Assembly (NCBI GenBank): GCA_044892525.1
Contig: CM097885.1
Span: forward strand, 139,996,001 to 140,060,000
From: Schmidtea polychroa
Taxonomy: Eukaryota
Length of the DNA stretch: 64,000 bases
Direction of reading: 5' to 3'
Below are positions 22,524 to 64,000 of the stretch, one piece after another (positions within the stretch are counted from its first letter, which is position 1; each line of letters opens with the position of its first letter). The position numbers were made by a program, and so were the translations under genes. The notes beneath the pieces were generated by a model, which was given only the letters and a program-made list of their open reading frames with translations, did not search any database and was not told where the DNA came from.

Positions 22524-25390
22524 AGATTCAAATCGGTAACAAAGAAGAGAATGTGATTTTTGTTGTTGTTAAAAAGGTTTCACCGTCAATTATTGGTGGG
22601 ATAGATTTACTTCGTCAATTCAACATCAAGTTAATGAAAATAAACGATAGTATAACTGAAAATACGGAAATAGAAAATAATTTTAATGAAATTTGTAATA
22701 TTGAGGCAAGATTTAGCAACTCATATAATAATGAGAAAAGATTTAGTCGAGCAATAAAATTATTTGATTTAAAAAAAGGAGATAAAATGTATCAGATAAT
22801 TAATGAAAATAAAGAAGTTTTTATGGCTGATAAATGGGACATTGGAAAAACAGATTTATTATGGCACGAAATCAAAACTACTGAGGGCCCAATTTACATG
22901 AACCCTAGACGACAACCGGCTCATTTAGAAGAAAAGATTGAGGAGGCTATAAAAAATTTGGAAGAAAATGGTATTATTAGGAAATGTGATTCGAGTTGGA
23001 ATACTCCATTGGTATGTGTTTGGAAAAAAGAAAAGAATGACATCAGATTGTGTTTGGATTTTAGAAACCTAAATAAAATAACAGAAAGACAAATATTTCC
23101 AATGCCTAATATTGAACAAATGTTAGATTCACTCAATGGATCCAAGTTTTTTAGTACTATAGATCTTGGAAGTGCATATTATCAAGTGGAGTTAACAAAT
23201 AATTCACAAGAAAAAACCGCATTTTCAACAAGGAGCGGACAGTACTGTTTTAATAGAATGCCTTTTGGAATTGCTGCGGCACCGGCTACATTTCAAAAAC
23301 TAATGAATATGGTTTTAGGAAAACTTCTGTGGAATACAGCTATTGTATATTTGGATGACATATTAATATTTTCTACAAATAAAGAAGAGCATTTTAAAAG
23401 AATAAATGAAGTATTAATGAAAATTAAGGAAGCGGGATTACGAGTAAATCCAGAAAAATGTATATTTTTAACAAATGAGACAAAATTTTTAGGCCATATA
23501 ATTAATAATGAAGGTGTGAAAGTGGATGAAAATAAAATTGAAGCAATTAAAAATTTTGTAAGACCTCAATGTTTGAAACAACTAAGAAGTTTTTTGGGGT
23601 TGTGTAATTATTATAGAAAATTTATAAAAAATTATTCAATGTTTTCACGAATATTAGAGTCTATATGTGGTACGACTAATGAAAAACTTATATGGTCAGA
23701 AAAATGTGAAGAAGCATTTGAAGAATTAAAAAATGCATTATCGAAAACACCAGTATTAATATACCCTAACTTTCAGAAAGAATTTATTTTGGACACTGAT
23801 GCAAGTTTTGACACAATTGGTGCGGTGTTATCACAGTTAGACGAACAGGGACATGAGCGAGTAATTGCATATGGTTCGCATTCAATGAATAAGCATGAAA
23901 TAGGTTATTGTATAACAAGGAAGGAGTTATTGGCCATTTATTATTTTACTCAACATTTTAAACATTATTTGTATGGGAAAAAATTTAAATTAAGAACGGA
24001 CCATAAAGCAATAACATTCATGATGGCAACAAAAAAGCCAATCACGGCACAATTCCAAACTTGGATAAATTTTCTTAGCAGTTTGGATATGGATATTTCA
24101 TTTAGAAAAGGTATGGAACATACCAATGCAGATGCATTATCCCGAGATAAGTGTGGACGATGTACTCAATGTATGGAAGTTCATGAAAATCCTAAAACAG
24201 AAAAAATGAAAACAAGACTTTTAACAATGACAGCTGTTAAGCAAGGTGTGATTTGGCAAAAGGGTAATGTTGAGATAGAAAATCAAAAAGAACTAATCAT
24301 GAAAAATGTAAAAACTAAATTTAAGATTGATGATGATGTTATCATGACAAAAGAAAATAAAATTTGGATTCCTAAAAACAATCGCGAAAAATTTATCAAA
24401 GAAATGCATAAAATCCTATGCCACGCAGGTTGCAAAAAAGTGATTGACTACATAAAAGTAAATTATGACATGGATGAATTACAAATGATAACTACAGAAA
24501 TTATTCAAAATTGTGAATTATGTCAAAAAAGAAAAACACTAACAACTAAAACAAAGGAAACTATACTAAAAACGGAAGTGTCGAAACCGTTTGAAACAAT
24601 TGCTATAGATTTTTGTGGACCTTTGAAAACAAGTGTACATGGGAAAAAGTATATTTTAGGAATTATTGATATGTGCACTCGATATATTTCTCTTACAGCA
24701 GTTTCTAAGCAAGATGAGAAAACAACAGCGGACACAATAATGAAATTTTGGATTCTAAAATACGGTTCTCCTAGGATAATTCAAGTAGATTGTGGGAAGA
24801 CATTTGAATCAGGTGTGATGAAAGAATTAGCTAAAACCCATAACATAATGCTTCAATTTTCAAGTCCATACCATCATAGTGCAAATGGATTAATAGAACG
24901 GCAATTTCGAACAATAAGAGATTTCATGAGTACCTCAATTAAAGATAGATTAAAAAGCAATTGGGTAGAGGTATTACCAGAAATTGAATTTGCTTTGAAC
25001 GCAACCGTACAAAGTACATTAGGGAAAAGTCCAGCGGAAATAGTATTTGGGTTTCGAATAACAAGAGAATGGCAAAACAAAAAGGAAGTTACTAATGACC
25101 GAATTAGAATCATTGAAGAGATACAAGAAAAGCAAAGAAATGTTAAGTACAGAAACGCAGATAGAATTAATAGAGAATTTAAAATAGATGACAACGTTTT
25201 AGTAAAGATAGACACAAGAAAAAAAGAAGATGATAGATACAGAGGACCTTTTCGAGTGATAAAAAAACTACATGATAGAAGTTACGAACTTATGGATAAA
25301 GAAGGTAAAACAATGATTCGAAATGTAGAATGGCTAAAGCCTTTTAAACAGGGGGGATGTGAGGAAGATTTAATTATTAGCACAATATAA
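22475..25390 (+). CDS. pol: Pol: RT, RNase H, integrase; separated from the protease by an apparent 1-bp deletion near 22490
   Basis: CLDFRNLN, YLDD, LDTDAS, TDHKA, HxxxxH/CxxC, IQVDCG and NGLIER motifs. Confidence 0.96.
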   Translation: MVCKWRPLETFGNVKLKIQIGNKEENVIFVVVKKVSPSIIGGIDLLRQFNIKLMKINDSITENTEIENNFNEICNIEARFSNSYNNEKRFSRAIKLFDLKKGDKMYQIINENKEVFMADKWDIGKTDLLWHEIKTTEGPIYMNPRRQPAHLEEKIEEAIKNLEENGIIRKCDSSWNTPLVCVWKKEKNDIRLCLDFRNLNKITERQIFPMPNIEQMLDSLNGSKFFSTIDLGSAYYQVELTNNSQEKTAFSTRSGQYCFNRMPFGIAAAPATFQKLMNMVLGKLLWNTAIVYLDDILIFSTNKEEHFKRINEVLMKIKEAGLRVNPEKCIFLTNETKFLGHIINNEGVKVDENKIEAIKNFVRPQCLKQLRSFLGLCNYYRKFIKNYSMFSRILESICGTTNEKLIWSEKCEEAFEELKNALSKTPVLIYPNFQKEFILDTDASFDTIGAVLSQLDEQGHERVIAYGSHSMNKHEIGYCITRKELLAIYYFTQHFKHYLYGKKFKLRTDHKAITFMMATKKPITAQFQTWINFLSSLDMDISFRKGMEHTNADALSRDKCGRCTQCMEVHENPKTEKMKTRLLTMTAVKQGVIWQKGNVEIENQKELIMKNVKTKFKIDDDVIMTKENKIWIPKNNREKFIKEMHKILCHAGCKKVIDYIKVNYDMDELQMITTEIIQNCELCQKRKTLTTKTKETILKTEVSKPFETIAIDFCGPLKTSVHGKKYILGIIDMCTRYISLTAVSKQDEKTTADTIMKFWILKYGSPRIIQVDCGKTFESGVMKELAKTHNIMLQFSSPYHHSANGLIERQFRTIRDFMSTSIKDRLKSNWVEVLPEIEFALNATVQSTLGKSPAEIVFGFRITREWQNKKEVTNDRIRIIEEIQEKQRNVKYRNADRINREFKIDDNVLVKIDTRKKEDDRYRGPFRVIKKLHDRSYELMDKEGKTMIRNVEWLKPFKQGGCEEDLIISTI

Positions 25391-26592: not shown

Positions 26593-27555
26593 TCCAGAAA
26601 CGTACTCCTAATTCGAACCACTCGTATATCAAAGCAAATAACTCATAGCAAATAATGGAAACCCCAATGATTCGTTCCACAACAAAATATTTATTCAAAT
26701 AAAATGTTTAATATAAAATAAAACGAATACATATAGGTGCATAAACATAAATCACACAATTAATTTGCGTTTGGAACACCGAAATCTTTTTCTTTTGTGT
26801 AACTCTAACAACGAAACTATCAAGGTACTATTGCTTATGCCTTCCCTTTATAATTTCTCAAAAATGTGACATTACATTGTCATTTAAAGGTTGACTGCTT
26901 CCACTGCCACAACTTTATTTGGGTGGTGTTTTTCCATAACATTCTGGATTGTTTCCCACATTTTAAACATGTATTTAATCTCATTTGAAGTGAGTGATCC
27001 CTCCTGCTTTTTCTCGTCTTCCTCATACGAGATCTCATCCACAAACCTTGCTGTTGCTAGCGATGCAGATCCATTAGCTCGTCGGTGGTCAGCTCCTGGC
27101 CATGTTCCTCCAACGGCTTTTCAATGTCATCCTCATTCAATTCCAGTCACTTGTTCTTCCCCAAGGAGACAATTTCATCAAGAACTGGCAGTTCCTCTTC
27201 GTGACCTAACTCCTCACAATTATCACCTAGAATGCAGTCAGGCCACAGTTTTCTCCAAGCAGAATTGAGAGTTCTCTTGGTGCCCCTATTCCAAGCTTTA
27301 TCGATGATTTTGAGACACTTCACGATGTCGGAATGATTTTTCCAGAATTCTCGGAAGATAAGATTTGTTCCTTCAGTTACCTCAAGCCTCGTTGAAATAA
27401 TGCTTTTGGTGTAAAGCTTTTTAAAGATCGAAATGACTTGCTGATCCATGGGCTGGCGTATTGAAGTGATTTTTGGAGGAAGGAACTTCATCTTAATGAA
27501 CTCGAATTCCTCCAGTAAGTCATCCTTGAGACTTGGAGGATGAGCAGGGGGATTG
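26593..27555 (-). mobile_element. Tigger/pogo body: subterminal region plus decayed DDE_1 transposase C-terminus
   Basis: PAHP..L, FLPPKITSIRQPMDQQVI and AWRKLWP motifs; Tigger-type subterminal CACTCGTATATCAAAGC...GATTCGTTCCACAAC. Confidence 0.85.
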
Positions 27556-28618
27556 TATAAATTACACAAATATAAATTACAGTCCAAAGTATACAAAACA
27601 AAATTTGTGTAGTGTTGAAAACTGATAGTAAAATTGTGATAAAGCTTAAAAGGTTGAAACAATGAATTTCTACCAATTTGTGATCCCCACCCATGCATCC
27701 TCTACCACTATGTGAAATTAGGGTGTGTATAATTATGAAATATTTTAAGATGACAGCGCACACATACCCGAATGTTACTAAATTTATGTAGATTATTTTG
27801 GAACAAATGAAAAATTTTTTCTAGACTTATTTCATTTTCAGTACACAGACACTCGTGATTTATCACTCTGCGCATTAGTTGTTATCATACATTTTAATGA
27901 TTGTTTAAAACAATGATATTATTTAATAATTTTCTTTTCTTTTTTATTTTGCGATATTTTTAACGAATTTTATGGGTATTTTTTCATAATGATCATTTAA
28001 TTATTTTGTCTTATTTTCTCATTTAATTTCTGTACTCTTTCCAATAGTTTCTTCGTATGTTATTAAGATCAATAATTGTTCCCAAATTTTGATCTTATTA
28101 ATTAGTTTTTTTATTTATCATTCTTTTTTGTGAGTTGGCTGATTTTTCGGATGATTGTTTCTTCCTTAACTATGTTGGTGATTATAATTTTTTGCGATTA
28201 TCATTTTTATTATACATGTTTAATTATCTTCGTGGTGTCGTGTACTTTAGATTTTTATTCGACTTGGTGCGGTTTTCATACTATATATTTTCGACACATT
28301 TAAACAAACTCACAATTTTTTTTTGTGTTCGAATGATAGTTCCTTGACCTTTAATTGGTAAGGACCTAACAAATTTCAATTACCTTAAGTTCTTTCTACA
28401 CTAAAGATTGATATTTGTTTTATTGTCTGAAAAGAAATGAATATATATGAAAATTAAAATAGATCAATAGTGAAAAAATAAAGATTTTATTGTTATTTGA
28501 CTAACTAACATTTGAATATAATATTTATAATATAAATAATTTTGATTGATTTGTTTATTTATTTAAACTAAATTCTTTAATTAAATTTAAATTTGTTAGA
28601 AATATCTATTCTTAAATA

Positions 28619-47699: not shown

Positions 47700-50430
47700 T
47701 ATTGTAGACTAATTTTTTGCTTTCTGGAATCGGAGACATCCCAAAAATTCAAGAAGAGTTGTGATCAATTGAGAAAAATTGACATTAATGTCGATCAACA
47801 GGGGGCCAAATAACCGGTTTTTATATAGACTTTTCCTTTCCTAAACTGTAAGTAAATATCTAAACTACTTAAATAATTTATCTATATTGGAAACTGTGAC
47901 GTGAAAGGTTTCTTGGTTTTCATCATGAATATAATTGCTTTATGATCCGTTCATAAAGTAAATCGTTTGATGTACAAATAATGTTTGAAATGATTTACAA
48001 AAAAGTAAATAGGTAGCAATTCATTTCTTGTAATGCAATAACCTAATTCGTATTTACTTATTTACTCTTCCTTGTCGTTTTCCTCAAAACTTGCATCCGT
48101 ATCTAATAAAAATTCTTTTGAAAATCTGAGTATAACAAAACGGGATTTGAACTCAGTCTACTCTTTAACATTTCAAAACTCCTTCCACACTCGTCAGTCC
48201 ATATTAGTTAATTCTGATTACTTATGCAAAGACTTTCCAGCGGTTTTGCATGTTTTGTATATTCTTCAATAAATTTCCTATAATAATTTGATAAATCTAA
48301 AATCTTCTTAATTTCTTTAAACATTTTGATCTTTCAAATTCTTTGATATCTTTTATTTTATCTGGATCTGTTTGGATACCTTCTAAAAATGGCATTTTGA
48401 CGGGCTTAATTTTAATCCAGTCTTTATAAAAACTTTTTCAAATGCCTGACAGTGTTCTTCTAAAGATTTTGCAAAATTAAAATATCATCTAAATATACCA
48501 CTATATCTTTAAAATTTATTTTTTAGTATCATTCATTAGTTATTCCAGAAAGGCACCCTATTAAAACAATATCGTCTATTTTTAATCGAAAATACTGTTT
48601 AGGATTTTCTAATTCAACTTGATATTATGCATTTCCGAGACATTTTGTTGAAAGATACTTTGAGTCATTCAAAACATCTAATAATTCATTCATATACGAC
48701 ATTGGAAACACTGGTCTTTTACATATATTATTTATCAAAGTTTTATGTCATTGTTTCCTTTTTATTCTTTACATACACTAACGGTGTATTCCACGGTGAT
48801 TAACATTCTTTAATAATTCCATACCTTTCCATTTCTTAAATTTGATCTTCAATTTTATCCAATAGATGTGCCGGTTGTCACCGTAGATTTAGCGCAATCG
48901 GTTTATTTGACGTAATGATTTCAAGATTCGTCTTTCCTCCATCCCAACTATGAATCATAAATACACTACTGCATTTTACAGCCATACCTAACAAGATCAT
49001 TATTTTCATTTAACAAACTTAAATATTCAGCAACTAATGCATTATTTTCCAAAACATCATTAATTTTATAACTATTATTTAATTTTTTGTATTGCTAAAA
49101 ATGATTTACTGAGATTAAATTAATCCTTTCAATACTGTACATATTGTCCCAGAGAATTTTATAGTCTATTTTAGTACTGTACGGTCATAGGCTCGAAAAC
49201 AAATCCAAACCTGTCTGCTTTGTTGCTGTTTTCTATCTGCTTTTTTTCTTTTCTATAAAATTTTGTCAGTCTAGATGTTGCTAACAAACAGTAGATACGT
49301 GTGCTATAAATATTACATGAATTATTAGAATAAAAAAAATCGTATTGAAAGGGTTAATTAAAATTTCATAAATCAAATCATAATTATCAAACATACAATC
49401 ACATTCATACATACAATTTTTGCTGAGAATAGCATATACCTTTATTGCTGAGCACAAAATCATCGGCATTTGGATGCGATTGCTAATCAGAATAATTTTC
49501 ACAAATACATTCTTCATTGATCCTGGAAACTTATCTGTTGAAAACTTTCCTATTCAATTCATAGCATTGATATTTGAAATGTCCTTGTCAACGACAATGT
49601 GCACATTGGACGTTTGCACATTCGTGTCTACAATGATAATTTTCTTGATTTGTCCAGAATTTAGACATATTTGACTCTTTTTCTTCTTTGGTTAAAATTG
49701 AGTTCTCCTTTATTTGGTCTTTTGATCTAGTGTCGGCCATTATTTATTGGGTTTCTAAAATGCTGATTTGTCATTGGTCTACTCTCAAAAGTTTGGTTTT
49801 TTTTTCGTCCAACATAGTTTTCTGTTTGACTAATAATTTTGTTCCATACAGGATTTCGGTTATTTGAAAATTGAAGTTTCGGTATATGATCTCTTGGTTA
49901 TTACGGCGATTAATTTGTTGTTTAATTCTATAATTCTTCTATAGAATTAAACAAATTCTTCTATAAATTTCTCGTGCTTTTCCAATCTGTCTCTAATTTC
50001 TTCTAAGAATTTTAAATCTTGGATCCAAAATATAAGAGGAGCTTCATAAGTGTTTTCTTGTCTATTTTACGTTTGAAAACATTTCTGGTCAGTTTCTCCA
50101 ACTCTTTTCAATAGTTTCAAACATTTATTCACCTTTTGTAAAATACAATGCTCGCTGCAAATCTTCAATAAGGGTTGAAGGCCTTTAGAATGTTTTCATG
50201 AGTCAATTTATATATTCATCTTCCGATTTTATCTCGGCATTCAATCTTCAATATTCAATATCTGATAAAAAGTTCCATGTCCACAAAGAATTGTTGAAAT
50301 TCTTGACCAATTTCGTATATTTTTGGCTGTTCAACAACATTTTCCAAGAGCGTGGTTGACTTATTAGAGTTATTGTTTATAAGCCTAATTTGTTGTATTT
50401 AACTCATTCATAAAATCGAGAAATCCGAAT
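47700..50430 (-). mobile_element. Heavily decayed gypsy element (gag knuckle plus RT)
   Basis: CAHCR*QGHFKYQC near 49570-49610; PWNTP, YCFNRVPF and VVYLDDILI near 48480-48830. Confidence 0.75.
49124..49353. mobile_element. piggyBac-type MITE (230 bp), same family as 30980-31414, opposite orientation
   Basis: TTAA flanks; shared TIR and internal blocks (GTCTAGATGTTGCTAACAAACAGTAGA). Confidence 0.88.
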
Positions 50431-50919
50431 AATAAATATGTTCCTATCACATAGTTAGATAAAACAAAGTTCAAAGAAATTCAAATATATTCAGCAAAGA
50501 TTTCATTCATTCTTCAACAGAAAATATTAGTTTTTATTTATTATTATTTTTTATATTAAAATATCTTTTTTAAAATTTATACATTTTTCAGTTAATATTC
50601 AAATTATTTAAATCTTTATCTTTTAACAATTTTGAGATTTAATATTTTAAAATCTAACATCTCACAACACACATTTGCCTTTTCTGTTATCGCATGTTTC
50701 CACTTTTCTTATGAAATATATTGATTTTGCATTGGCAATTCAATTAATTAATTGTTAATTACTTCGCACAAACTTAACAATAAAATTAATTTCATTGGAA
50801 TATTTCATATCGATTTTGATCTTCATTTCGTAATGTTTTAACAAAAATTTATAATTTCAGCTTTCTTTTGCAAGATAATATTCTATCAAAATATTTATCA
50901 ATAATTAAGAGTAGTATGA

Positions 50920-52278
50920 TGTGTCCCCGCCAGATCAGGTCCCCGCCAGACCACATATACCCCCCCCCCCGGTCTGAAAAATTTTATTTTTTTTTTAGAA
51001 CGATGCCTAATATTTTTAGAACTATTATGTAATCAATGCCTAATATTTTTAGAACGATGCCTAATATTTTTAGAACTATTACGTAATTTTTTTAAATTAA
51101 TTGGTCCAGCGGTGACCTACTTTTTTTCTTCCCAAAAGTAATGTTCCCGCCAACAAATTTTATTGAACGATACCTCATCTTAAAGCTCAGTCCAAGACCT
51201 TTCGAATGAGCTATAGGTATCTTATATATATTTAATAGTTTTAATGTTATTAACAATTGATGACCACCATCTTTTCAACGTTAAATTATTATTATTATTC
51301 AAAATATTATTAATTGGTCCAGCGGTGACCTACTTTTTTTCATCCCAAAAATTGTTGTTCCCACCAACATATTATATTGATCGATAGCTTATTTTAAAGC
51401 TCTGTGCAAGAACTTTCTAATGAGATATAGATTTTTATCATACGATGACTCATCACATTTTTAGAACAAAGACAATGACTCATCACATTTTTAGAACGAT
51501 GCCTAATATTTTTAGAACGATGCCAAATACTTTTAGAACGATGCCTAATACTTTTAGAACGATGCCTCTTATTTTTAGAACGATGCCTAATATTTTTAGA
51601 ATGATTACGTCATACTTTTAGAACGATGCCTAATATTTTTAGAACGATGCCTAATATTTTTAGAACGATGCCTAATATTTTTAGAACGATGTCTATTATT
51701 TTTAGAATGGTGCCTAATATTTTTAGAACTATTACGTAATCGATGCCTAATATTTTTAGAACGATGCCATATTATTATTTTTCAAAAATATTATTAACTG
51801 TGCTGGCGGTGACCTACCTTTTGACTTCCCAGAACTTTTTGAGTTTTCAAAATTATTTGAATATGTATACATCATTTTGAAGACCAGACGGAGACAAATC
51901 TTTTGAGCTATCAAAATAATTTTTATCACTAGTGGTATAAAAGTTATTAATTTTTTAGTCCGACACTGATTGATGAAAAAATTATTATTTTCAAAAATAT
52001 TTTTAGAATGATGCCTAATATTTTTAGAATGATTACGTCATACTTTTAGAACGATGCCTAATATTTTTAGAACGATGCCTAATATTTTTAGAACGATTAC
52101 GTCATATTTTTAGAACGATGTCTAATATTTTTAGAACGATGTCTAATATTTTTAGAATTAATAATTTTGTTTTAATTATCGATGATTATATAATTTTGTT
52201 TAAATCATTGATTATATAATTCTTTTGTTTTAATTATCGAATACGTAATAATATAATTTTGTTTAAATCGTTGATTAC
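50920..52278. repeat. Modular minisatellite region: 21-bp TTTTTAGAACGATGCCTAATA arrays interleaved with longer repeated blocks
   Basis: Arrays near 50995-51085, 51500-51770 and 52005-52160; GCGGTGACCTAC block at ~51110, ~51320 and ~51810. Confidence 0.85.
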
Positions 52279-52519
52279 NNNNNNNNNNNNNNNNNNNNNN
52301 NNNNNNNNNNNNNNNNNNNNNNNNNNNNNNNNNNNNNNNNNNNNNNNNNNNNNNNNNNNNNNNNNNNNNNNNNNNNNNNNNNNNNNNNNNNNNNNNNNNN
52401 NNNNNNNNNNNNNNNNNNNATCCGACAAGATATTCTGTCCCCCTATGGGTACTGCTCACAAATGTACTACTCACATTCAACAAGTCACAAGGGTACTGCT
52501 CACACTCAATATGTCGTAA

Positions 52520-52552
52520 ATTATTATTATTATTATTTCAAATACAAGTTCA

Positions 52553-52592
<40 letters not shown>

Positions 52593-52970
52593 TATTATTA
52601 CGCGCACGGGGAATATTATTATCATATATACTCTAAATCCATCCGACAAAATATTCTATCCCTTTATGGGTATTGCTCATATGGGTAATGGTCAAAGGTG
52701 TACTACTCACATTCAACATGTCTCAAAGGGTATAATATAATTATTATTAAATTCTGACCAACTTAAATCAATGAAGGGGTAGAACAAAAATATATTAAGT
52801 TGCGGTATTTTAAATTTAAAAATATTTTAAAAACTTATTTTGACACTAAAGTTTACTTAATTAACAAAGACATAATTATTGCACATGCTTTGCATAAATA
52901 TTATTATTTTTTAAATTTTCAATATTTTCTTTTAAAGTATTAACACGCGCGGGAGTTATTATTATTATTA

Positions 52971-53014
<44 letters not shown>

Positions 53015-53134
53015 GTTAATGAAAAATCTAAAATATGGTTTACACACACACACACACGACCCATTAACCATTATTTGTATCAATATTAGTGAAAACCTAA
53101 AATATCTTCTACACACATATACAACCCATTAAAC

Positions 53135-53191
<57 letters not shown>

Positions 53192-53472
53192 GCAAATATT
53201 AGTCAAAAACATAAAAACACACACTCAACCAATTAACAATTATTATTAACCATTATTATTAGCAATATTAGTGAAAACCTAAAATATTTTCTACACACAT
53301 ATACAACCCATTAAACTTTTATTATTAATATTATTATCTATATTATGATTATTATCAATATCAGTCAAAAACTTAAAATATTTTCTACCCACATACACAA
53401 CCCATTAAACTTTATTATTATTATTAGTGAAAAACCTAAAATATTTTTTACACAACCCATTAACAATTATTA

Positions 53473-53540
<68 letters not shown>

Positions 53541-53995
53541 GAAAAACTTAAAATTTTTTTTTTTACACACACAACCCATTAACAATTATTATTATCAATA
53601 TTAGTGAAAACCTAAAATATTTTCTACACACACACAACCCATTAACCATTATTATTATTGCAAATATTAGTCAAAAACATAAAAACACTCATAAACCATT
53701 ATTATTATCAATATTCGTGAAAACCTCAAATATTTTTTACACACNNNNNNNNNNNNNNNNNNNNNNNNNNNNNNNNNNNNNNNNNNNNNNNNNNNNNNNN
53801 NNNNNNNNNNNNNNNNNNNNNNNNNNNNNNNNNNNNNNNNNNNNNNNNNNNNNNNNNNNNNNNNNNNNNNNNNNNNNNNNNNAATAATTTTTACACACAC
53901 AACCCCTCAACCATTATTATTATTATCAATATTAATAACCTAAAATATTTTCTACACACATATACAACCCATTAAACTTTTATTATTATTATTAA

Positions 53996-54041
<46 letters not shown>

Positions 54042-54277
54042 GCAAATATTAGTTAAAAAGATAAATTATTTCTACACACATACACAACCCATTAACCATT
54101 ATTATTATCATTATTAGTGAAAACCTAAAATATTTTTTACACACACACACAACCCATTAACCATTATTATTATTGCAAATATTAGTCAAAAACATAAAAA
54201 CACTCATAAACCATTATTATTATCAATATTCGTGAAAACCTCAAATATTTTTTACACACATATACAACCCATTAAAC

Positions 54278-54316
<39 letters not shown>

Positions 54317-54360
54317 ATTATTATTATTATTAGTGAAAAAACCTTAAATAATTTTTACAC
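52520..54360. repeat. Satellite of ~60-65-bp units with variable (ATT)n tracts
   Basis: Recurring ATATTAGTGAAAACCTAAAATATTTTCTACACACATATACAACCCATTAA. Confidence 0.85.
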
Positions 54361-54607
54361 ACTAAGTTATGGGGTAGAGTATTATTATGTTTGCAGTATT
54401 CTGTGTTTGCCTTTACAGGAAGTTGTCAATAAGGAGCGATAATTTTACACACACATTCTATATACACATACCTTGTTTAACATGGGTGTATATATTCCTA
54501 GTTTATCCGACAAAATATTCTGTCCCCCTATGGGTATTGCTCACAAAGGTACTGCTAAAACTTTAACATATTATTACACACAATGTATAAAAAATATTAT
54601 TACTGTC

Positions 54608-57600
54608 CACACATGCTACAAGTTAGTATTCCCATCGATAGCTCATCTTAAAGTCTAGTGTAAGATCTATCTAATGATATATTATTNNNNNNNNNNNNNN
54701 NNNNNNNNNNNNNNNNNNNNNNNNNNNNNNNNNNNNNNNNNNNNNNNNNNNNNNNNNNNNNNNNNNNNNNNNNNNNNNNNNNNNNNNNNNNNNNNNNNNN
54801 NNNNNNNNNNNNNNNNNNNNNNNNNNNNNNNNNNNNNNNNNNNNNNNNNNNNNNNNNNNNNNNAATAATTTTTACATACTAAGTTATGGGGTAGAGTATT
54901 ATTATGTTTGCAGTATTCTGCCTTTACAGGAAGTTGTCAATAAGGAGCGATAATTTTACACACACATTCTATATACACATACCTTGTTTAACATGGGTGT
55001 ATATACTCATAGTTTATCCGACAAAATATTCTGTCCCCCTATGGGTATTGCTCACAAAGGTACTACTCACACTCAACATATCGCAAGGGTATATTAATTA
55101 GGGTTAGTAAATAAAACCTATCACACATACTATTTAAACTATAAAAATCAAGACAAGAGAGGACAAGGCAAAGTTTATGCATTTAGTATTGCCAGGTCTA
55201 ATGAGCAGTGACCAAATATCTGTGCCTGAAAGACACGGTGGATATTTGTTCGCGTCCACAAGGGTCGTCTGTGCCTCCCCCAAGTGGGGTCAAAAGAACC
55301 TGGGCATTATAGCTTTCCGTACGGAACATTACGCCTAGCATGGGTAGTCAACTACCAGCACATTCGAAACGTATAATTTCAAAATACATGCGTCATTGGC
55401 ACTATAACCAAATTAATTAATGTTTTCACTAACACAAATATATATTTACAGAGGCCTCCCACTAGTTGGATTACAACCGCCCACCACGACGATCAGCTTG
55501 TAAATATATATTAATTAAGGGATAAAGAGGACCCACCCAACCCTATTATATTTAATTTACAAATTTTTCTCGCTCTTCTGCTGGTAATCTATCTCAAAAT
55601 TAATCTCTCCATCGGGCCATTTGGAATACATCTTGCAAATTGGACGTATTTCTTAGTCTCTGATGCGGCGTCAACTATCATTGCTAAAATTTATATTGAT
55701 TTAAAAGCAATTAACTTACATTATCTAACATTTTATCATCACAAATTAAATTCTGGCTGACTATTAGGCAACTGTTATTTGTGGTATACTTTTCAATGTC
55801 ATTTCCCACCATAAAACACAGATACCTAAATATAATATATATATTTTAAAGAATTAATTCATGTCTTACATTAATAATAATATTCTTCAGGTAGTACTTT
55901 ACAATATCTAATTGATAAAACATCGGTTTTTTCCCATTTTTCTTGACATTCGTTGAAAGTTTACATAATTTAAGTAAACATTCATGTTGAAGGACACCCC
56001 CAATCAGCTAATTCATTTAAGAAATCCCGAACATAGCAATGTTTCACCATTTTGTCTGGTTCATTTTCTTCTATAATTCATGTTTTAATAAGAAATCTCT
56101 AAATCCAGAACATAAGTCATTTAGTGTTTCACCATTTTGTTCATCTTCTTCATAATTATATAATTCATTTTCTTCATTACTAAGTAAAATAATTAAAATA
56201 TTGTAGTAAATTCTTTATTTACTTACTTTATGGATACTAAAACGAAAGAAATAACGTTATATCAGAATTATATTTAAATAATTTAAATTTAGTTATTTAA
56301 ACATATTTAAACACTTTAGTTATTTAAGCATATTTAAACATTAATATTATTATATAGTATAATTTTATATAATTTTATATAATATTATAATATTATAATA
56401 TTATGTATTGTAAATTTAATATATCCTTAATTTAATTTTTTAAATTCAAAAATTTATAATGAAGATTCTTTGAATTAAAAAATATTCTGTTAGTATTTCC
56501 AGGCAGAAAACAACGAATTCAATAATTAAAATCTTAATTTTCATGTTGTTAGGGTTGTGGCCAGAAGTTAATCGCCATCTAATCGTTTGTTCTCAATTTC
56601 GCTCATTTTTGTTCAAAACATTCAGGTGAGTTGTTATCTGGAAAGTTTCTTTGAGCTCAGTTTTGTTAAAACACTCACGGTATTTTTGAGGGACGTGACA
56701 CTGGAAATAAATTAACAATGGGTGGTCATCCATACATGTTGTTGGTTTGAACTGTTGATTTATTTTAGAAATATGTATATTAAAAACATTTAAGGTATCA
56801 TTCAGTAAAATAATATAGTATTTTTGAGTATTTTTAGTTAATTTATAAATAACAGTATTTTGATATATCAATAAAGACCATATACACCGAGTTTATCCGA
56901 CAAAATATTCTGTCCCCCTATGGATATTGCTAGCAAGGGTACTGGTCACACTCAACATGTCGCAATATTAATCATTTAGAAATTCTTAGGTAAGATAATC
57001 AGAAATTTGTGAATATTTTAAATGTAACTTTACACTTATGTCGAGCGACTAATTTATTGGTTAACTTTGTAGTCATTTAAAGCAAAAATTAATTTATTCA
57101 TCTAATGTTCGTTACAATAGATAATAATATGAGAAAAACATGGTCATTATTCATTGATAATTTTAAATTCTTTATCATTTGGAGTAAATTTGTTTGAGGC
57201 AAAAATATTTAAAGGAGTCATAATAGAAATATGGTTATCATTTAACCAAATAAGGTGCTTATTAGTTAAAAATATATATTTATATAGGGTTACAATTCTT
57301 TTCTAATTTAATTAGATGATCATTAGACGTAATATATCTTTGCGAGAAATTTAAGATGTTTGAGTAACCAAAACATTGATATTTTGGGTCATCAATTTAT
57401 GAATAGTGCTTAATTTTCTCATTTTTAGTGATTTAAAATAATATTTAGCAAAGGTAATTTAGCAAAATATCATTTATCCATCCGATAATAATATTCCTTC
57501 AATAGATTAACTGATATTCAACCGATTTAATTTCTAATTAAAATCATAAAATTCCTTCAATAAAGATCAATTTTCTTTAACCGTTGTCGATTTCCAACTT

Positions 57601-58947
57601 TTAAGTCAATATTTCTCAAGTTTTGTCACTGATGTCCCCACAATGAATAAAATAACTTCTTAAGTAAAATAATTTAAAGCAATAACCTTTGATATCAATC
57701 CCAATTAATTCTAAAGATTTCAAATATTTCATTGTGAAAACCAAGTAAATTGATCATTAACCCTAAACGACTTAATAAAACAGTGGATAATTAATATAAA
57801 ACTGGTTCTAAAACATAAATCTAAATTACTGTGCAATAACATTCATCACAACCTAATAAACCTCTAAAACGATATAATTTCACAGGAACTATTATTAATT
57901 CATAGCTAAATACTGACTATTTCCCTTTAAAATTTACCAATAAGAACATTGTCGATTTAAATAGAGATTTTAAACATTTCCACCAAATATTTCTATCATT
58001 TTAAACACCTTAAAAATCATATATTACCATCTTAACCAACCGACTTTAATATATCAGACCTTTAATATATCAATTCTCTTAAAATCCATAGAAAATTCTT
58101 CAAAATATGAATTTTATTTATTTGTTACAGACATCCTTCCATTGAAATAATTTAGTATCTAAATTCAAAGAGTCCACTAAAAGATCAAAATTTACTAAAA
58201 TCAATATTTTCTACAAATATTTCACCACATTTACCATCAAATACCTAACTAGAAATGAAATATATCGATTGATCATAATTCTTCATCGATTCAGCTAATT
58301 ATATAGCAATTATAACGTGATATATCTTTCAAAATCACAAATTTCAGTATATTTTACAATAATTTTTACAAAAATTAAATAATAATAACTTGATTATTGT
58401 AAAAACTCTAATTATTAACCTAACTGTCATTAAAAATATTATTATTTAAAAGTAAATTTAAAAACAAGTCAATAAAATATAGCAAATTATCAAGAAATTA
58501 ATTAAATTTGTCTTAGAATTAACACTAAAACGTTAAATTTCAAAATATTCTTTCAATTATTCACAAAAAGGTTAGTAATAATGTTAGTAAAATCCCGCTA
58601 ACTCTAAAAATTACCAACGAATTTAATGCTAAATAATAACCAAAAATTTGCCTAAATAAAACACACCAATACCTTTACGACCAGTACCCTTACGAGCAGT
58701 ACCAATTGTGAACAGTACCCATAGAGGGAGAAAATATCTTGTCGGATAAACTCAGAGTATATATAATAAAACGAATTAACAATAACTCCATCAAATTGAA
58801 TCAGTCAAATTAACACAAATTTTGATAAAAAATCTTATTCTAAAATGGTAAGAAGCGTAAAGTCGAAAGATAATTTTAATAGCACCGAGATAAATTAATA
58901 ATATTATTCTCAGGTGGTAAGAATCTTCATTAAAGTTAGGAAATTAT
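54608..58947 (+). repeat. Left arm of a large inverted repeat (may extend further left)
   Basis: Reverse complement of 59642-64000; identical ORFs 54904-55101/63489-63686 and 56593-56871/61719-61997. Confidence 0.95.
56885..58757. mobile_element. TA-flanked, TIR-bounded 1.87-kb module with non-transposase cargo (Tc1-like ends)
   Basis: TA|CACCGAGTTTATCCGACAAAATATTC ... AAAATATCTTGTCGGATAAACTCAGAG|TA. Confidence 0.6.
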
Positions 58948-59641
58948 AAGAACTACCAATTGCTATAAAATATTTAAACGAATTTAGTTTTGTTGTTTAA
59001 TAACTTTCGGTTATATTTGAGTGAGTTTTCGAGTGTACCTTTTAACTTTCAGTGCTCATTTTCATTAAAAAGAGTTATGTATCTTAAATTATCTTTTGGA
59101 ATATTTGTTTTTGAAATATTTAGTGTAAAATAGTAAATTTAATAATAAATTGTTAATATTAAAGGACTTAATCAAAATTTAAAATCGGAATTTATCATAA
59201 TTACTCTGTCAAATACAATTCACGGTTTCTTATGTAATAAAATAATCATTTGGGGATTAAATACTTTATTAAATAAAAGTTTATCACATTATTAAAATAT
59301 TTTAATTCGTTAGTAGCTCATATAATAGAAATAATTTTATATATCCTCATCACTTATAGCCGCCGACTCTCGATTTCCCACTAATTATTATCATTTATAT
59401 TCTCCTGGCAAATATTTCTTTTAAAATTGTATTAAATATTTTTTTATTAAAGTGAACGTTTTTTATGAATTTTTATGAAATTTATGAATTTTATGAAATA
59501 ATTTTAAATAAATACAATTAATATATATCCATGCCACTTCTCAGTATATTTTCATTAACCTTCCATAATCCAATAATGAATTATTCTAACACTTATTTTA
59601 ACCCCTTTGAAGTTTATTATTAATTTATCACAGAATAATAA

Positions 59642-62600
59642 ATAATTTCTTAACTTTAATGAAGATTCTTACCACCTGAGAATAATATTGTTAATTTATC
59701 TCGGTGCTATTAAAATTATCTTTCGACTTTACGCTTCTTACCATTTTAGAATAAGATTTTTTATCAAAATTTGTGTTAATTTGACTGATTCAATTTGATG
59801 GAGTTATTATTAATTCGTTTTATTATATATACTCTGAGTTTATCCGACAAGATATTTTCTCAATCTATGGGTACTGTTCACAATTGGTACTGCTCGTAAG
59901 GGTACTGGTCGTAAAGGTATTGGTGTGTTTTATTTAGGCAAATTTTTGGTTATTATTTAGCATTAAATTCGTTGGTAATTTTTAGAGTTAGCGGGATTTT
60001 ACTAACATTATTACTAACCTTTTTGTGAATAATTGAAAGAATATTTTGAAATTTAACGTTTTAGTGTTAATTCTAAGACAAATTTAATTAATTTCTTGAT
60101 AATTTGCTATATTTTATTGACTTGTTTTTAAATTTACTTTTAAATAATAATATTTTTAATGACAGTTAGGTTAATAATTAGAGTTTTTACAATAATCAAG
60201 TTATTATTATTTAATTTTTGTAAAAATTATTGTAAAATATACTGAAATTTGTGATTTTGAAAGATATATCACGTTATAATTGCTATATAATTAGCTGAAT
60301 CGATGAAGAATTATGATCAATCGATATATTTCATTTCTAGTTAGGTATTTGATGGTAAATGTGGTGAAATATTTGTAGAAAATATTGATTTTAGTAAATT
60401 TTGATTTTTTTAATGGGCTCTTTGAATTTAGATACTAAATTATTTCAATGGAAGGATGTCTGTAACAAATAAATAAAATTCATATTTTGAAGAATTTTCT
60501 ATGGATTTTAAGAGAATTGATATATTAAAGGTCTGATATATTAAAGTCGGTTGGTTAAGATGGTAATATATGATTTTTAAGGTGTTTAAAATGATAGAAA
60601 TATTTGGTGGAAATGTTTAAAATCTCTATTTAAATCGACAATGTTCTTATTGGTAAATTTTAAAGGGAAATAGTCAGTATTTAGCTATGAATTAATAATA
60701 GTTCCTGTGAAATTATATCGTTTTAGAGGTTTATTAGGTTGTGATGAATGTTATTGCACAGTAATTTAGATTTATGTTTTAGAACCAGTTTTATATTAAT
60801 TATCCACTGTTTTATTAAGTCGTTTAGGGTTAATGATCAATTTACTTGGTTTTCACAATGAAATATTTGAAATCTTTAGAATTAATTGGGATTGATATCA
60901 AAGGTTATTGCTTTAAATTATTTTACTTAAGAAGTTATTTTATTCATTGTGGGGACATCAGTGACAAAACTTGAGAAATATTGACTTAAAAGTTGGAAAT
61001 CGACAACGGTTAAAGAAAATTGATCTTTATTGAAGGAATTTTATGATTTTAATTAGAAATTAAATCGGTTGAATATCAGTTAATCTATTGAAGGAATATT
61101 ATTATCGGATGGATAAATGATATTTTGCTAAATTACCTTTGCTAAATATTATTTTAAATCACTAAAAATGAGAAAATTAAGCACTATTCATAAATTGATG
61201 ACCCAAAATATCAATGTTTTGGTTACTCAAACATCTTAAATTTCTCGCAAAGATATATTACGTCTAATGATCATCTAATTAAATTAGAAAAGAATTGTAA
61301 CCCTATATAAATATATATTTTTAACTAATAAGCACCTTATTTGGTTAAATGATAACCATATTTCTATTATGACTCCTTTAAATATTTTTGCCTCAAACAA
61401 ATTTACTCCAAATGATAAAGAATTTAAAATTATCAATGAATAATGACCATGTTTTTCTCATATTATTATCTATTGTAACGAACATTAGATGAATAAATTA
61501 ATTTTTGCTTTAAATGACTACAAAGTTAACCAATAAATTAGTCGCTCGACATAAGTGTAAAGTTACATTTAAAATATTCACAAATTTCTGATTATCTTAC
61601 CTAAGAATTTCTAAATGATTAATATTGCGACATGTTGAGTGTGACCAGTACCCTTGCTAGCAATATCCATAGGGGGACAGAATATTTTGTCGGATAAACT
61701 CGGTGTATATGGTCTTTATTGATATATCAAAATACTGTTATTTATAAATTAACTAAAAATACTCAAAAATACTATATTATTTTACTGAATGATACCTTAA
61801 ATGTTTTTAATATACATATTTCTAAAATAAATCAACAGTTCAAACCAACAACATGTATGGATGACCACCCATTGTTAATTTATTTCCAGTGTCACGTCCC
61901 TCAAAAATACCGTGAGTGTTTTAACAAAACTGAGCTCAAAGAAACTTTCCAGATAACAACTCACCTGAATGTTTTGAACAAAAATGAGCGAAATTGAGAA
62001 CAAACGATTAGATGGCGATTAACTTCTGGCCACAACCCTAACAACATGAAAATTAAGATATTAATTATTGAATTCGTTGTTTTCTGCCTGGAAATACTAA
62101 CAGAATATTTTTTAATTCAAAGAATCTTCATTATAAATTTTTGAATTTAAAAAATTAAATTAAGGATATATTAAATTTACAATACATAATATTATAATAT
62201 TATAATATTATATAAAATTATATAAAATTATACTATATAATAATATTAATGTTTAAATATGCTTAAATAACTAAAGTGTTTAAATATGTTTAAATAACTA
62301 AATTTAAATTATTTAAATATAATTCTGATATAACGTTATTTCTTTCGTTTTAGTATCCATAAAGTAAGTAAATAAAGAATTTACTACAATATTTTAATTA
62401 TTTTACTTAGTAATGAAGAAAATGAATTATATAATTATGAAGAAGATGAACAAAATGGTGAAACACTAAATGACTTATGTTCTGGATTTAGAGATTTCTT
62501 ATTAAAACATGAATTATAGAAGAAAATGAACCAGACAAAATGGTGAAACATTGCTATGTTCGGGATTTCTTAAATGAATTAGCTGATTGGGGGTGTCCTT

Positions 62601-64000
62601 CAACATGAATGTTTACTTAAATTATGTAAACTTTCAACGAATGTCAAGAAAAATGGGAAAAAACCGATGTTTTATCAATTAGATATTGTAAAGTACTACC
62701 TGAAGAATATTATTATTAATGTAAGACATGAATTAATTCTTTAAAATATATATATTATATTTAGGTATCTGTGTTTTATGGTGGGAAATGACATTGAAAA
62801 GTATACCACAAATAACAGTTGCCTAATAGTCAGCCAGAATTTAATTTGTGATGATAAAATGTTAGATAATGTAAGTTAATTGCTTTTAAATCAATATAAA
62901 TTTTAGCAATGATAGTTGACGCCGCATCAGAGACTAAGAAATACGTCCAATTTGCAAGATGTATTCCAAATGGCCCGATGGAGAGATTAATTTTGAGATA
63001 GATTACCAGCAGAAGAGCGAGAAAAATTTGTAAATTAAATATAATAGGGTTGGGTGGGTCCTCTTTATCCCTTAATTAATATATATTTACAAGCTGATCG
63101 TCGTGGTGGGCGGTTGTAATCCAACTAGTGGGAGGCCTCTGTAAATATATATTTGTGTTAGTGAAAACATTAATTAATTTGGTTATAGTGCCAATGACGC
63201 ATGTATTTTGAAATTATACGTTTCGAATGTGCTGGTAGTTGACTACCCATGCTAGGCGTAATGTTCCGTACGGAAAGCTATAATGCCCAGGTTCTTTTGA
63301 CCCCACTTGGGGGAGGCACAGACGACCCTTGTGGACGCGAACAAATATCCACCGTGTCTTTCAGGCACAGATATTTGGTCACTGCTCATTAGACCTGGCA
63401 ATACTAAATGCATAAACTTTGCCTTGTCCTCTCTTGTCTTGATTTTTATAGTTTAAATAGTATGTGTGATAGGTTTTATTTACTAACCCTAATTAATATA
63501 CCCTTGCGATATGTTGAGTGTGAGTAGTACCTTTGTGAGCAATACCCATAGGGGGACAGAATATTTTGTCGGATAAACTATGAGTATATACACCCATGTT
63601 AAACAAGGTATGTGTATATAGAATGTGTGTGTAAAATTATCGCTCCTTATTGACAACTTCCTGTAAAGGCAGAATACTGCAAACATAATAATACTCTACC
63701 CCATAACTTAGTATGTAAAAATTATTNNNNNNNNNNNNNNNNNNNNNNNNNNNNNNNNNNNNNNNNNNNNNNNNNNNNNNNNNNNNNNNNNNNNNNNNNN
63801 NNNNNNNNNNNNNNNNNNNNNNNNNNNNNNNNNNNNNNNNNNNNNNNNNNNNNNNNNNNNNNNNNNNNNNNNNNNNNNNNNNNNNNNNNNNNNNNNNNNN
63901 NNNNNNNNNNNNNNNNNNNNNAATAATATATCATTAGATAGATCTTACACTAGACTTTAAGATGAGCTATCGATGGGAATACTAACTTGTAGCATGTGTG
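59642..64000 (-). repeat. Right arm of the large inverted repeat (truncated by the window edge)
   Basis: Mirror of 54608-58947; ~694-bp unique spacer between the arms. Confidence 0.95.
59832..61705. mobile_element. Mirror copy of the TIR-bounded module
   Basis: Inverse of 56885-58757, one base longer. Confidence 0.6.

What the first reader, a model, noticed from the sequence alone, without database searches (positions are those of the whole stretch)
54608..64000. Giant slightly imperfect palindrome (arms >=4.3 kb, spacer ~0.7 kb)
The arms mirror each other, including the N-gap positions, but are not identical. I noticed about eight differences, mostly near the centre (around 58183-58195 with a 1-bp indel, 58736-58737, 58899, 58939) and one at ~56531. 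That argues against simple duplication of one contig and fits arm-to-arm gene conversion or a fold-back origin. Options: a Foldback-like composite transposon built from the end modules, a breakage-fusion scar, or an amplified or extrachromosomal hairpin unit. Transcription through it would give kb-long dsRNA.
Basis: partly seen in the sequence, partly recalled or inferred. Interest (0 to 1): 0.7.

Follow-up and report, generated by a model that had tools for sequence, protein, structure and literature searches.

The report
Gene-less palindromic transposon with Maverick ends
The giant palindrome is real, but it is one copy of a many-hundred-copy, gene-less "fold-back" transposon whose ends and 6-bp insertion scar match Maverick/Polinton virus-like elements, and whose two arms evolve in step.

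Summary
Observation confirmed and enlarged. Window 54608-58947 mirrors 59642-64000 with 9 mismatches, one 1-nt indel and an 18-nt length difference inside a masked stretch. The mirror runs on beyond the finding. The whole unit is window 50910-67734 (16,825 nt): two ~8-kb arms around a 694-nt spacer.

It is not a local scar or an artefact.
- All ten copies examined share the palindrome.
- Nine of nine complete copies end 5'-AGTAGTA...TACTACT-3' and carry a different, perfect 6-bp target duplication.
- The genome holds 1,359 exact copies of the 17-nt terminus.
- The "N gaps" are masks over existing letters, not assembly gaps. I did not read them.

The element has no genes. (AGT)2//(ACT)2 ends plus a 6-bp duplication are the published Maverick/Polinton signature, and coding Mavericks abound in this genome.

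New here:
- The two arms of one element are usually each other's closest relatives.
- Most variants sit on both arms.
- Palindrome centres differ between copies.

This points to fold-back formation plus arm-to-arm homogenisation.

The scan has reported this family before at other loci. Verdict: new variant of a known kind, moderate interest.

The parts
50904..50909 (+). Left copy of the 6-bp target-site duplication, ATTAAG. The right copy lies outside the window at 67735-67740 (G000:C1:140063735-140063740).
50910..50926 (+). Element terminus, a 17-mer that begins (AGT)2A. Its mirror image ends the element at 67734.
   Evidence: The genome holds 669 + 690 exact copies and the control pattern gives 0.
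50910..58947 (+). Left arm, 8,038 nt.
50989..52207 (.). Sub-terminal arrays of a 21-nt unit (ATTTTTAGAACGATGCCTAAT).
52279..52419 (.). Masked stretch (N) inside the left arm. Not read.
52880..55090 (.). Repeated modules of about 0.5 kb with ATT microsatellites and 63-65-nt units.
   Evidence: families D3, D5, D7-D9.
53745..53882 (.). Masked stretch (N) inside the left arm. Not read.
54687..54863 (.). Masked stretch (N, 177 nt). It is the mirror partner of 63727-63921.
55001..55086 (+). Copy of the module that holds the 30-nt motif TATCCGACAARATATTCTGTCCCCCTATGG. Other copies lie at 54490-54575 and 56880-56965, with an inverted copy at 58706-58763.
   Evidence: The genome holds 3,361 + 3,290 exact copies of the motif.
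55399..55497 (-). Segment resembling the 5' (Alu) domain of SRP RNA. About 45 nt are aligned with high confidence. It is mirrored in the right arm.
   Evidence: RF00017, 29.6 bits, below the gathering score of 70.
58173..58183 (.). Patch where the two arms carry alternative family haplotypes: three mismatches and the 1-nt indel. The partner is 60406-60417.
58948..59641 (+). Asymmetric 694-nt spacer at the palindrome centre.
   Evidence: at least 40 copies at 99-100% identity. A 28-mer from it occurs 80 + 75 times.
59642..64000 (-). Right arm, the part inside the window. It continues to 67734.
63727..63921 (.). Masked stretch (N, 195 nt). It is the mirror partner of 54687-54863.

Best explanation
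The palindrome is one inserted copy (window 50910-67734, 16.8 kb) of a high-copy, gene-less fold-back transposon family.

Shown:
- The element moves as a whole palindrome and makes a 6-bp target duplication.
- Its ends read 5'-(AGT)2A...T(ACT)2-3'.
- The outer arms are tandem sub-repeats.
- The two arms of an element evolve in concert.

Inferred:
- It is a non-autonomous derivative of Maverick/Polinton virus-like elements. A Maverick-type integrase, supplied in trans by the many coding Mavericks of this genome, inserts it.
- The palindromic body arose by fold-back (copy-back) template switching during DNA synthesis. This happened more than once, which gives the different centres.
- The arms stay alike because the single strand folds into a hairpin or panhandle, or the two arms pair in the chromosome, and mismatches are then corrected to one arm.
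For: Family and mobility:
- The spacer has at least 40 copies at 99-100% identity.
- All copies checked are palindromes.
- Nine of nine complete copies, 11.5-16.8 kb long, have the same termini and nine different perfect 6-bp duplications.
- The terminus 17-mer occurs 1,359 times and the control 0 times. Pairs lie mostly 13-16 kb apart, with versions of about 1 kb and of 4.5-10 kb as well.
- Independent sequencing runs from three studies hold the sequence at very high depth.

Maverick signature:
- (AGT)2//(ACT)2 end motifs with perfect 6-bp duplications are the published mark of Mavericks (PMC8097293).
- 6 bp is the Polinton duplication length (PMC10045372).
- The genome holds many coding Mavericks: PF03175 gave 91 scored hits out of 8,819 candidates, with open frames up to 1,484 aa and five inverted pPolB pairs.
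- One terminus, at C1:4828642(+), lies 3.8 kb upstream of a same-strand pPolB match. That is the geometry seen in related Mavericks.

Concerted arms:
- Divergence in the inner 3.2 kb has a median of 0.32% within elements and 2.08% between them.
- In 8 of 10 elements, variants on both arms far outnumber one-armed ones.
- Arms of the same element are sister in 6 of 10 elements, and left arms never group with left arms.
- This element has four both-armed variants that are absent from 18 other arms. At one of them (58882/59707), more than 99.9% of contig depth in run X1 carries the other letter.

Repeated fold-back:
- The two copies of segment 55100-56300 lie 1.7, 3.6, 5.7, 6.4-6.6, 7.2 or 8.3 kb apart in different elements.
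- Four loci carry the spacer's 28-mer twice, in opposite orientations. At two of them the second copy is shown to be a partial spacer.
Against: - No sequence link to a coding Maverick. The arms hold no Maverick protein remnant (tblastn).
- There is no DNA similarity to six pPolB loci of this genome or to related Maverick contigs.
- Only 1 of 8 pPolB matches in the first 49.7 Mb of contig C1 has the exact terminus nearby. By chance that is roughly P = 0.03, so it is a lead and not proof.
- Other integrase-type transposons also make 6-bp duplications.
- Centre differences could also come from deletions, which long palindromes suffer.
- Two elements (C3_51.2 and C3_66.87) have arms that differ by 1.9-2.6%. 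In C3_51.2 the two arms belong to different lineages, so homogenisation is not obligatory at each transposition.
Confidence: 0.6

Rival explanations
1. The element is a fold-back transposon mobilised by a non-Maverick enzyme that also makes 6-bp duplications, such as an IS3EU/GingerRoot-type, Ginger2-type or still unknown DDE transposase.
For: - No coding partner was identified.
- IS3EU/GingerRoot elements usually make 6-bp duplications, and Ginger2 targets 6-bp AT-rich sites (PMC10045372, PMC2836005).
Against: - IS3EU/GingerRoot ends are TA..TA or TG..CA, and Ginger ends are TGTNR (PMC10045372, PMC2836005).
- All nine copies here end AG...CT with the (AGT)2 motif reported for Mavericks (PMC8097293).
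Confidence: 0.2
2. The arms are kept alike only by ordinary gene conversion between the two arms in the chromosome, as in large sex-chromosome palindromes. Replication has no role, and centre variety comes from central deletions.
For: - This single insertion has both-armed variants that are private to it.
- Elements with arms of mixed origin exist.
- Long palindromes are known to suffer central deletions (general knowledge).
Against: - Partial inverted duplications of the spacer cannot arise by deletion.
- This account does not explain how the palindrome first formed.

This rival concerns one step of the best explanation. It does not contradict the identity of the element as a transposon.
Confidence: 0.35
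3. The palindrome is a local rearrangement at this locus: a breakage-fusion scar, or a hairpin-capped break that was amplified.
For: There is a central asymmetric spacer, and the arm differences cluster near the centre.
Against: - The unit is bounded by a perfect 6-bp duplication.
- The same structure, with other duplications, lies at many unrelated loci.
Confidence: 0.01
4. The palindrome is an assembly or scaffolding artefact: one contig placed twice, or a chimeric read.
For: The mirrored N runs looked like mirrored gaps.
Against: - The N runs are masks over real letters.
- The arms differ at inherited polymorphic sites.
- Hundreds of copies have individual flanks.
- Short contigs from other runs cross the spacer-arm junctions (records 11 and 30).

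No long read spanning this very copy was available.
Confidence: 0.01

Closest known systems
Maverick/Polinton virus-like transposons
   Same: - 6-bp target duplication.
- Terminal inverted repeats.
- The 5'-(AGT)2//(ACT)2-3' end motif.
- Total length (11.5-16.8 kb) close to that of Mavericks (12.7-24.6 kb, PMC8097293).
   Different: - No pPolB, integrase, capsid or any other gene.
- The inverted repeats take up about 96% of the element, at 4.3-8 kb per arm. Published values are 46-1,500 bp (PMC8097293, PMC10748475) and about 2 kb in butterflies (bioRxiv 10.1101/2025.02.07.637071).
Drosophila Foldback (FB) elements
   Same: Long inverted repeats built of tandem sub-repeats, variable length, a central spacer and mostly no coding capacity.
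   Different: FB makes 9-bp duplications and belongs with Mutator-like elements (my own knowledge). The ends are unrelated.
Galileo, a P-superfamily element with Foldback-like repeats (PMC3573991)
   Same: [quoted passage not shown]
   Different: Galileo makes 7-bp duplications and has P-type transposase copies (my own knowledge for the duplication length). Its repeats reach about 1.2 kb, not 8 kb.
Tetrahymena Tlr1 elements, relatives of Mavericks
   Same: A Maverick-related element with long, complex inverted repeats that contain short tandem repeats (my own knowledge; the kinship is in PMC4028283 and PMC5499653).
   Different: Tlr elements carry genes between the repeats, which are under 1 kb.
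Snap-back (copy-back) defective genomes and panhandle repair of inverted terminal repeats in protein-primed replicators such as adenovirus
   Same: - The genome is reduced to one end plus its inverted copy.
- A reiterated trinucleotide sits at the very end.
- The two ends correct each other.
   Different: Those are episomal viral genomes studied in culture (my own knowledge). Replication of the present element by a protein-primed polymerase is not shown.
Large chromosomal palindromes kept alike by arm-to-arm gene conversion (primate sex chromosomes)
   Same: Arms are more than 99.7% identical around a unique spacer, and the arms evolve in concert.
   Different: Those are single-locus, gene-bearing structures. 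They are not mobile and have no target duplications.

Membership tests
Maverick/Polinton (as a non-autonomous derivative) | 6-bp target-site duplication | tested here: met
   Nine of nine complete copies have perfect and different 6-bp duplications. The literature value is in PMC8097293 and PMC10045372.
Maverick/Polinton (as a non-autonomous derivative) | Terminal inverted repeats with a conserved end motif, 5'-(AGT)2//(ACT)2-3' or (AG)3//(CT)3 | tested here: met
   The ends read AGTAGTA...TACTACT in all nine copies and in 1,359 genomic termini. The motif is described in PMC8097293.
Maverick/Polinton (autonomous member) | Encodes a protein-primed PolB, a retroviral-type integrase and capsid-module genes | tested here: not met
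   - No ORF of 100 aa or more in the arms or spacer.
- tblastn with 20 proteins of a related Maverick finds nothing in ten copies.
Maverick/Polinton (as a non-autonomous derivative) | Shares terminal and sub-terminal sequence with a coding Maverick of the same genome | tested here: inconclusive
   - Only positions could be compared. One of 8 pPolB matches has the exact terminus 3.8 kb upstream.
- Six pPolB loci do not reach their element ends.
Drosophila Foldback (FB) | 9-bp target duplication; FB-type ends | tested here: not met
   The duplication is 6 bp. The FB value is from my own knowledge.
Galileo / P superfamily | 7-8-bp target duplication | tested here: not met
   The duplication is 6 bp. 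The Galileo value is from my own knowledge.
IS3EU/GingerRoot | 6-bp duplication with TA..TA (rarely TG..CA) termini | tested here: not met
   The duplication length fits, but the termini are AG..CT in 9 of 9 copies. The criterion is in PMC10045372.
Chromosomal palindrome with arm-to-arm gene conversion | Concerted evolution of the two arms | tested here: met
   This describes how the arms behave and is not a family the element belongs to.

The most novel reading that the evidence does not exclude
These elements are snap-back, defective-interfering-like satellites of endogenous Maverick viruses. On this reading the helper's protein-primed polymerase copies them from the (AGT)2 ends. They re-form a perfect hairpin in each replication round. 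They are near genome size because they travel in Maverick capsids. They restrain the helper by competing for its proteins or through hairpin RNA.
Probability: 0.2. Interest if true: 0.8.

Novelty: new variant of a known kind. Interest (0 to 1): 0.5.

Why it matters
How Mavericks/Polintons replicate and whether they have parasites of their own is unknown, since their life cycle has been inferred mostly in silico. This family is abundant and young, and it keeps only Maverick-type ends. It offers a natural experiment on which sequences suffice for mobilisation.

The arm-by-arm variant pattern gives a readable record of how giant inverted repeats are homogenised.

On the practical side, 11-17-kb near-perfect palindromes present in hundreds of copies are a hazard for assembly, for read mapping and for genome stability in this animal. 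The genome is AT-rich and 781 Mb long with four chromosome-scale contigs. That would fit a planarian such as Schmidtea, but this is my guess and is unverified.

Tried and rejected
The link to a coding Maverick stayed positional.
2. Protein route to the genome's own Mavericks: the best database relatives of its pPolB are only 61% identical. Their contigs stop in C-run and tandem-repeat regions before the true termini, so their end motifs could not be read. They share no DNA with the fold-back family.
3. Scan of metagenome contigs for the terminus: one chance match in an unrelated repeat.
4. Search for an empty-site allele in the assembly: none. This is uninformative for a collapsed assembly.
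5. Reads: only short contigs of older runs were on offer and no long reads. The centre of this particular copy could not be spanned by one molecule. One run is only guessed to be RNA, so expression is not shown.
6. Rfam at gathering threshold and tRNA scan: nothing.
7. ORFs and six-frame pieces of the arm: no convincing coding remnant.
8. Masked N stretches: the genome tool returned letters there. I counted them, re-masked them and neither read nor printed them. Homologous stretches in other copies were not examined. Alignment columns next to the mask were left out of the analyses.
9. The much lower divergence of the spacer (median 0.14%) than of the arms (2.08%) among the ten copies is not interpreted. 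The copies were chosen by spacer similarity, which biases this comparison.
Full report
**1. The observation**

An inverted-repeat scan finds arms 54687-58193/60397-63903 and 58179-58947/59642-60410, plus an outer piece 54608-54863/63745-64000. A gapped alignment joins them into one mirror, 54608-58947 against 59642-64000. It has 9 mismatches, one unpaired base (60411) and an 18-nt register shift across the N runs. The central 694 nt (58948-59641) are not mirrored.

**2. The N runs**

The window is G000:C1:139996001-140060000 in a 781-Mb genome whose four largest contigs are 272, 190, 145 and 93 Mb. When I fetched the surrounding DNA, the genome tool returned letters at all 651 positions that read N in window 49000-64000, with identical lengths. 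So these are masks and not assembly gaps. The sequence on both sides is continuous in the assembly. The masks mirror each other because the masked sequence is part of both arms. I counted these letters only, masked them again before any analysis and did not read them.

**3. The true extent**

In the fetched 30 kb the mirror continues outward on both sides. Colinear blocks pair as follows:
- 50910-52226 with 67734-66442
- 52420-53018 with 66340-65727
- 52956-53744 with 65753-64951
- 53916-54686 with 64724-63922
- 54864-58947 with 63726-59642

Substitution divergence is 0.2-0.4% everywhere except the outermost 1.3 kb (1.9%), where 21-nt arrays slip. The unit is 16,825 nt, with arms of 8,038 and 8,093 nt.

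**4. It is a mobile element family**

- The spacer alone has at least 40 copies at 99-100% identity on all four large contigs.
- Four other copies checked at short range and ten at 20-kb range all have the same palindrome.
- Between-copy similarity stops abruptly on both sides, at the sequence AGTAGTA(T/G)GATGTG... and its mirror.
- Nine of nine copies with both ends carry a perfect 6-bp direct repeat of flanking DNA. It differs each time: ATTAAG here, and ATGATT, TAAGAA, TGCGCA, TCTGTA, ATTTTA, GTCCCT, ATTAAT and CCCATG elsewhere. Lengths are 11.5-16.8 kb.
- The 17-nt terminus occurs 669 + 690 times exactly, against 0 for the reversed control. Facing pairs lie mostly 13-16 kb apart, with a second class near 1 kb (MITE-like) and some of 4.5-10 kb.
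- A 28-mer of the spacer occurs 155 times.
- Contigs of independent public runs from three studies cover the region at very high word depth and cross both spacer-arm junctions.

A local scar, an amplified hairpin and an assembly artefact are thereby excluded.

**5. Anatomy**

- There are no genes. No ORF reaches 100 aa in the arms or spacer, and 20 proteins of a related Maverick find nothing by tblastn.
- The outer arms are tandem arrays of a 21-nt unit, followed by modules of about 0.5 kb with ATT microsatellites and 63-65-nt units.
- A module holding a 30-nt motif recurs three to four times per arm and once inverted near the centre. The motif has 6,651 exact genomic copies.
- A 99-nt stretch at 55399-55497 (minus strand) matches the 5' Alu domain of SRP RNA below Rfam's threshold. 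About 45 nt are aligned with high confidence.

**6. Which machinery**

A 6-bp duplication is characteristic of Polintons (PMC10045372). Vertebrate Mavericks carry conserved end motifs, the commonest being 5'-(AGT)2//(ACT)2-3', together with perfect 6-bp duplications (PMC8097293). That is exactly what these ends show.

IS3EU/GingerRoot elements also make 6-bp duplications but end TA..TA or TG..CA (PMC10045372). Ginger elements end TGTNR (PMC2836005). FB and Galileo make 9- and 7-bp duplications (my own knowledge).

The genome is rich in coding Mavericks. PF03175 gave 91 scored matches out of 8,819 candidates, many in open frames over 1,300 aa, and five inverted pairs with equal scores.

Published Maverick repeats measure 46-1,500 bp (PMC8097293, PMC10748475), or about 2 kb in butterflies (bioRxiv 10.1101/2025.02.07.637071). 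Arms of 4-8 kb that make up about 96% of a gene-less element lie outside the described range.

**7. The missing link**

I could not show a coding Maverick with these ends.
- The six pPolB loci I held do not reach their element ends and share no DNA with the family.
- Database relatives of the polymerase are at most 61% identical. Their contigs carry pPolB, integrase, an A32-like ATPase, and Bcl-2-like and TBP-like genes. They end in tandem repeats or C-runs before the true termini.

By position, one of eight pPolB matches in the first 49.7 Mb of C1 has an exact terminus 3.8 kb upstream on the same strand: C1:4828642 against C1:4832405. This matches the 'end, repeats, then pPolB' layout of the relatives. 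I estimate chance at about 0.03, so it is a lead only. The other seven have no exact terminus in the expected place, so the bulk of coding Mavericks use other terminal sequences.

**8. How the arms behave**

I aligned the 4.1 kb next to the spacer from both arms of ten elements, oriented by the asymmetric spacer.
- In the inner 3.2 kb, arm-to-arm divergence within an element has a median of 0.32%. Divergence between elements has a median of 2.08%.
- Most variants occur on both arms of the element that carries them. This copy has 18 both-armed and 9 one-armed variants, and eight of ten elements show the same excess.
- In a maximum-likelihood tree the two arms of one element are sister in six elements, with support of 80-100. 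Left arms never group with left arms. Element C3_51.2 has arms from two different, well supported lineages.
- This copy has four both-armed variants that none of the 18 other arms carries. For one of them (58882/59707), more than 99.9% of the contig depth in run X1 has the other letter.
- Of its nine arm differences, four are private to the right arm (62060, 59863, 59862, 59809). Five are alleles that segregate in the family, among them the patch 58173-58183 with the indel.

The arms are therefore homogenised again and again.

**9. How the palindrome forms**

The two copies of arm segment 55100-56300 lie 7.2 kb apart in standard elements. In others they lie 1.7, 3.6, 5.7, 6.4-6.6 or 8.3 kb apart. 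Four loci carry the spacer's 28-mer twice in opposite orientations, and at two of them the second copy is shown to be a partial spacer. Deletion can shorten a centre but cannot make an inverted partial copy of the spacer, so new turn-around points have arisen repeatedly.

The simplest account is copy-back template switching during DNA synthesis, which yields 'one end plus its mirror'. This is inferred and not shown. Whether homogenisation happens in a single-stranded hairpin or panhandle during element replication, or by conversion between the arms in the chromosome, cannot be decided here. The private both-armed variants fit either account, and the mixed-arm elements show that it is not obligatory at each move.

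**10. Verdict**

It is not a scar or an amplicon, and the 'gaps' are masks.

The element is best filed as a new, extreme, non-autonomous variant with Maverick/Polinton-type ends. Membership in the strict sense fails on gene content and is inconclusive on a shared terminus with a coding partner.

The scan has already reported members of this family at other loci of the same genome, with the same open question. This report adds the published end-motif match, the copy counts, the concerted-evolution test, the centre variety and one positional lead.

Noticed in passing
window 55399-55497 (minus strand); mirrored at about 63093-63191: A segment matches the 5' Alu domain of metazoan SRP (7SL) RNA: RF00017, 29.6 bits, below the gathering score of 70. 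About 45 nt reproduce the conserved helices and loops. It could be a captured 7SL fragment or a 7SL-derived SINE piece inside each arm.
   Followed up: partly
window 54490-54575, 55001-55086, 56880-56965, 58706-58763 and elsewhere: A 30-nt motif (TATCCGACAARATATTCTGTCCCCCTATGG) has 6,651 exact copies in the genome. They are often arranged as + + + / - - - clusters, which suggests many more fold-back elements than the exact-terminus count shows. Its role is unknown; it could be a protein-binding site or an older nested element.
   Followed up: partly
G000:C1:235384712/235393695, C3:32534493/32544220, C1:126058387/126068737, C1:139680126/139687007, C1:264967225/264968853: Protein-primed polymerase genes occur as inverted pairs with identical scores, 0.5-9 kb apart. 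So coding Maverick sequence also exists in palindromic form. One pair lies about 310 kb upstream of this window, next to another copy of the 694-nt spacer (C1:139693600).
   Followed up: no
G000:C1:98165323/98165791, C2:92156973/92157441, C2:66565625/66566401, C2:159291849/159293040: The spacer's 28-mer occurs twice in opposite orientations, 0.5-1.2 kb apart. At two of these loci the second copy is seen to be only a partial spacer. These are secondary palindrome centres inside the spacer.
   Followed up: no
window 20809-25390: An apparently intact Ty3/Gypsy retrotransposon. The gag-like ORF has zinc knuckles, and a 971-aa pol ORF has RT, RNase H and integrase domains. A pogo-like DDE_1 fragment lies at 27147-27698, and hAT-like remnants (Spin-doc zinc finger, DUF4371) lie at 6091-7178.
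   Followed up: partly
ten copies of the family (loci L009-L029): Among the ten copies the 694-nt spacer differs by a median of 0.14%, while the adjacent arms differ by 2.08%. The copies were picked by spacer similarity, so this is biased. If it is real, the spacer (the present centre) is much younger than the arm sequence pool.
   Followed up: partly
ENA contigs L041-L045 (several assemblies, about 16 kb each): Related Mavericks, with pPolB 59% identical to this genome's, assemble as discrete contigs of about 16 kb in many small assemblies. They carry Bcl-2-like and TBP-like genes beside the core module. The contigs stop at C-runs short of the termini.
   Followed up: partly
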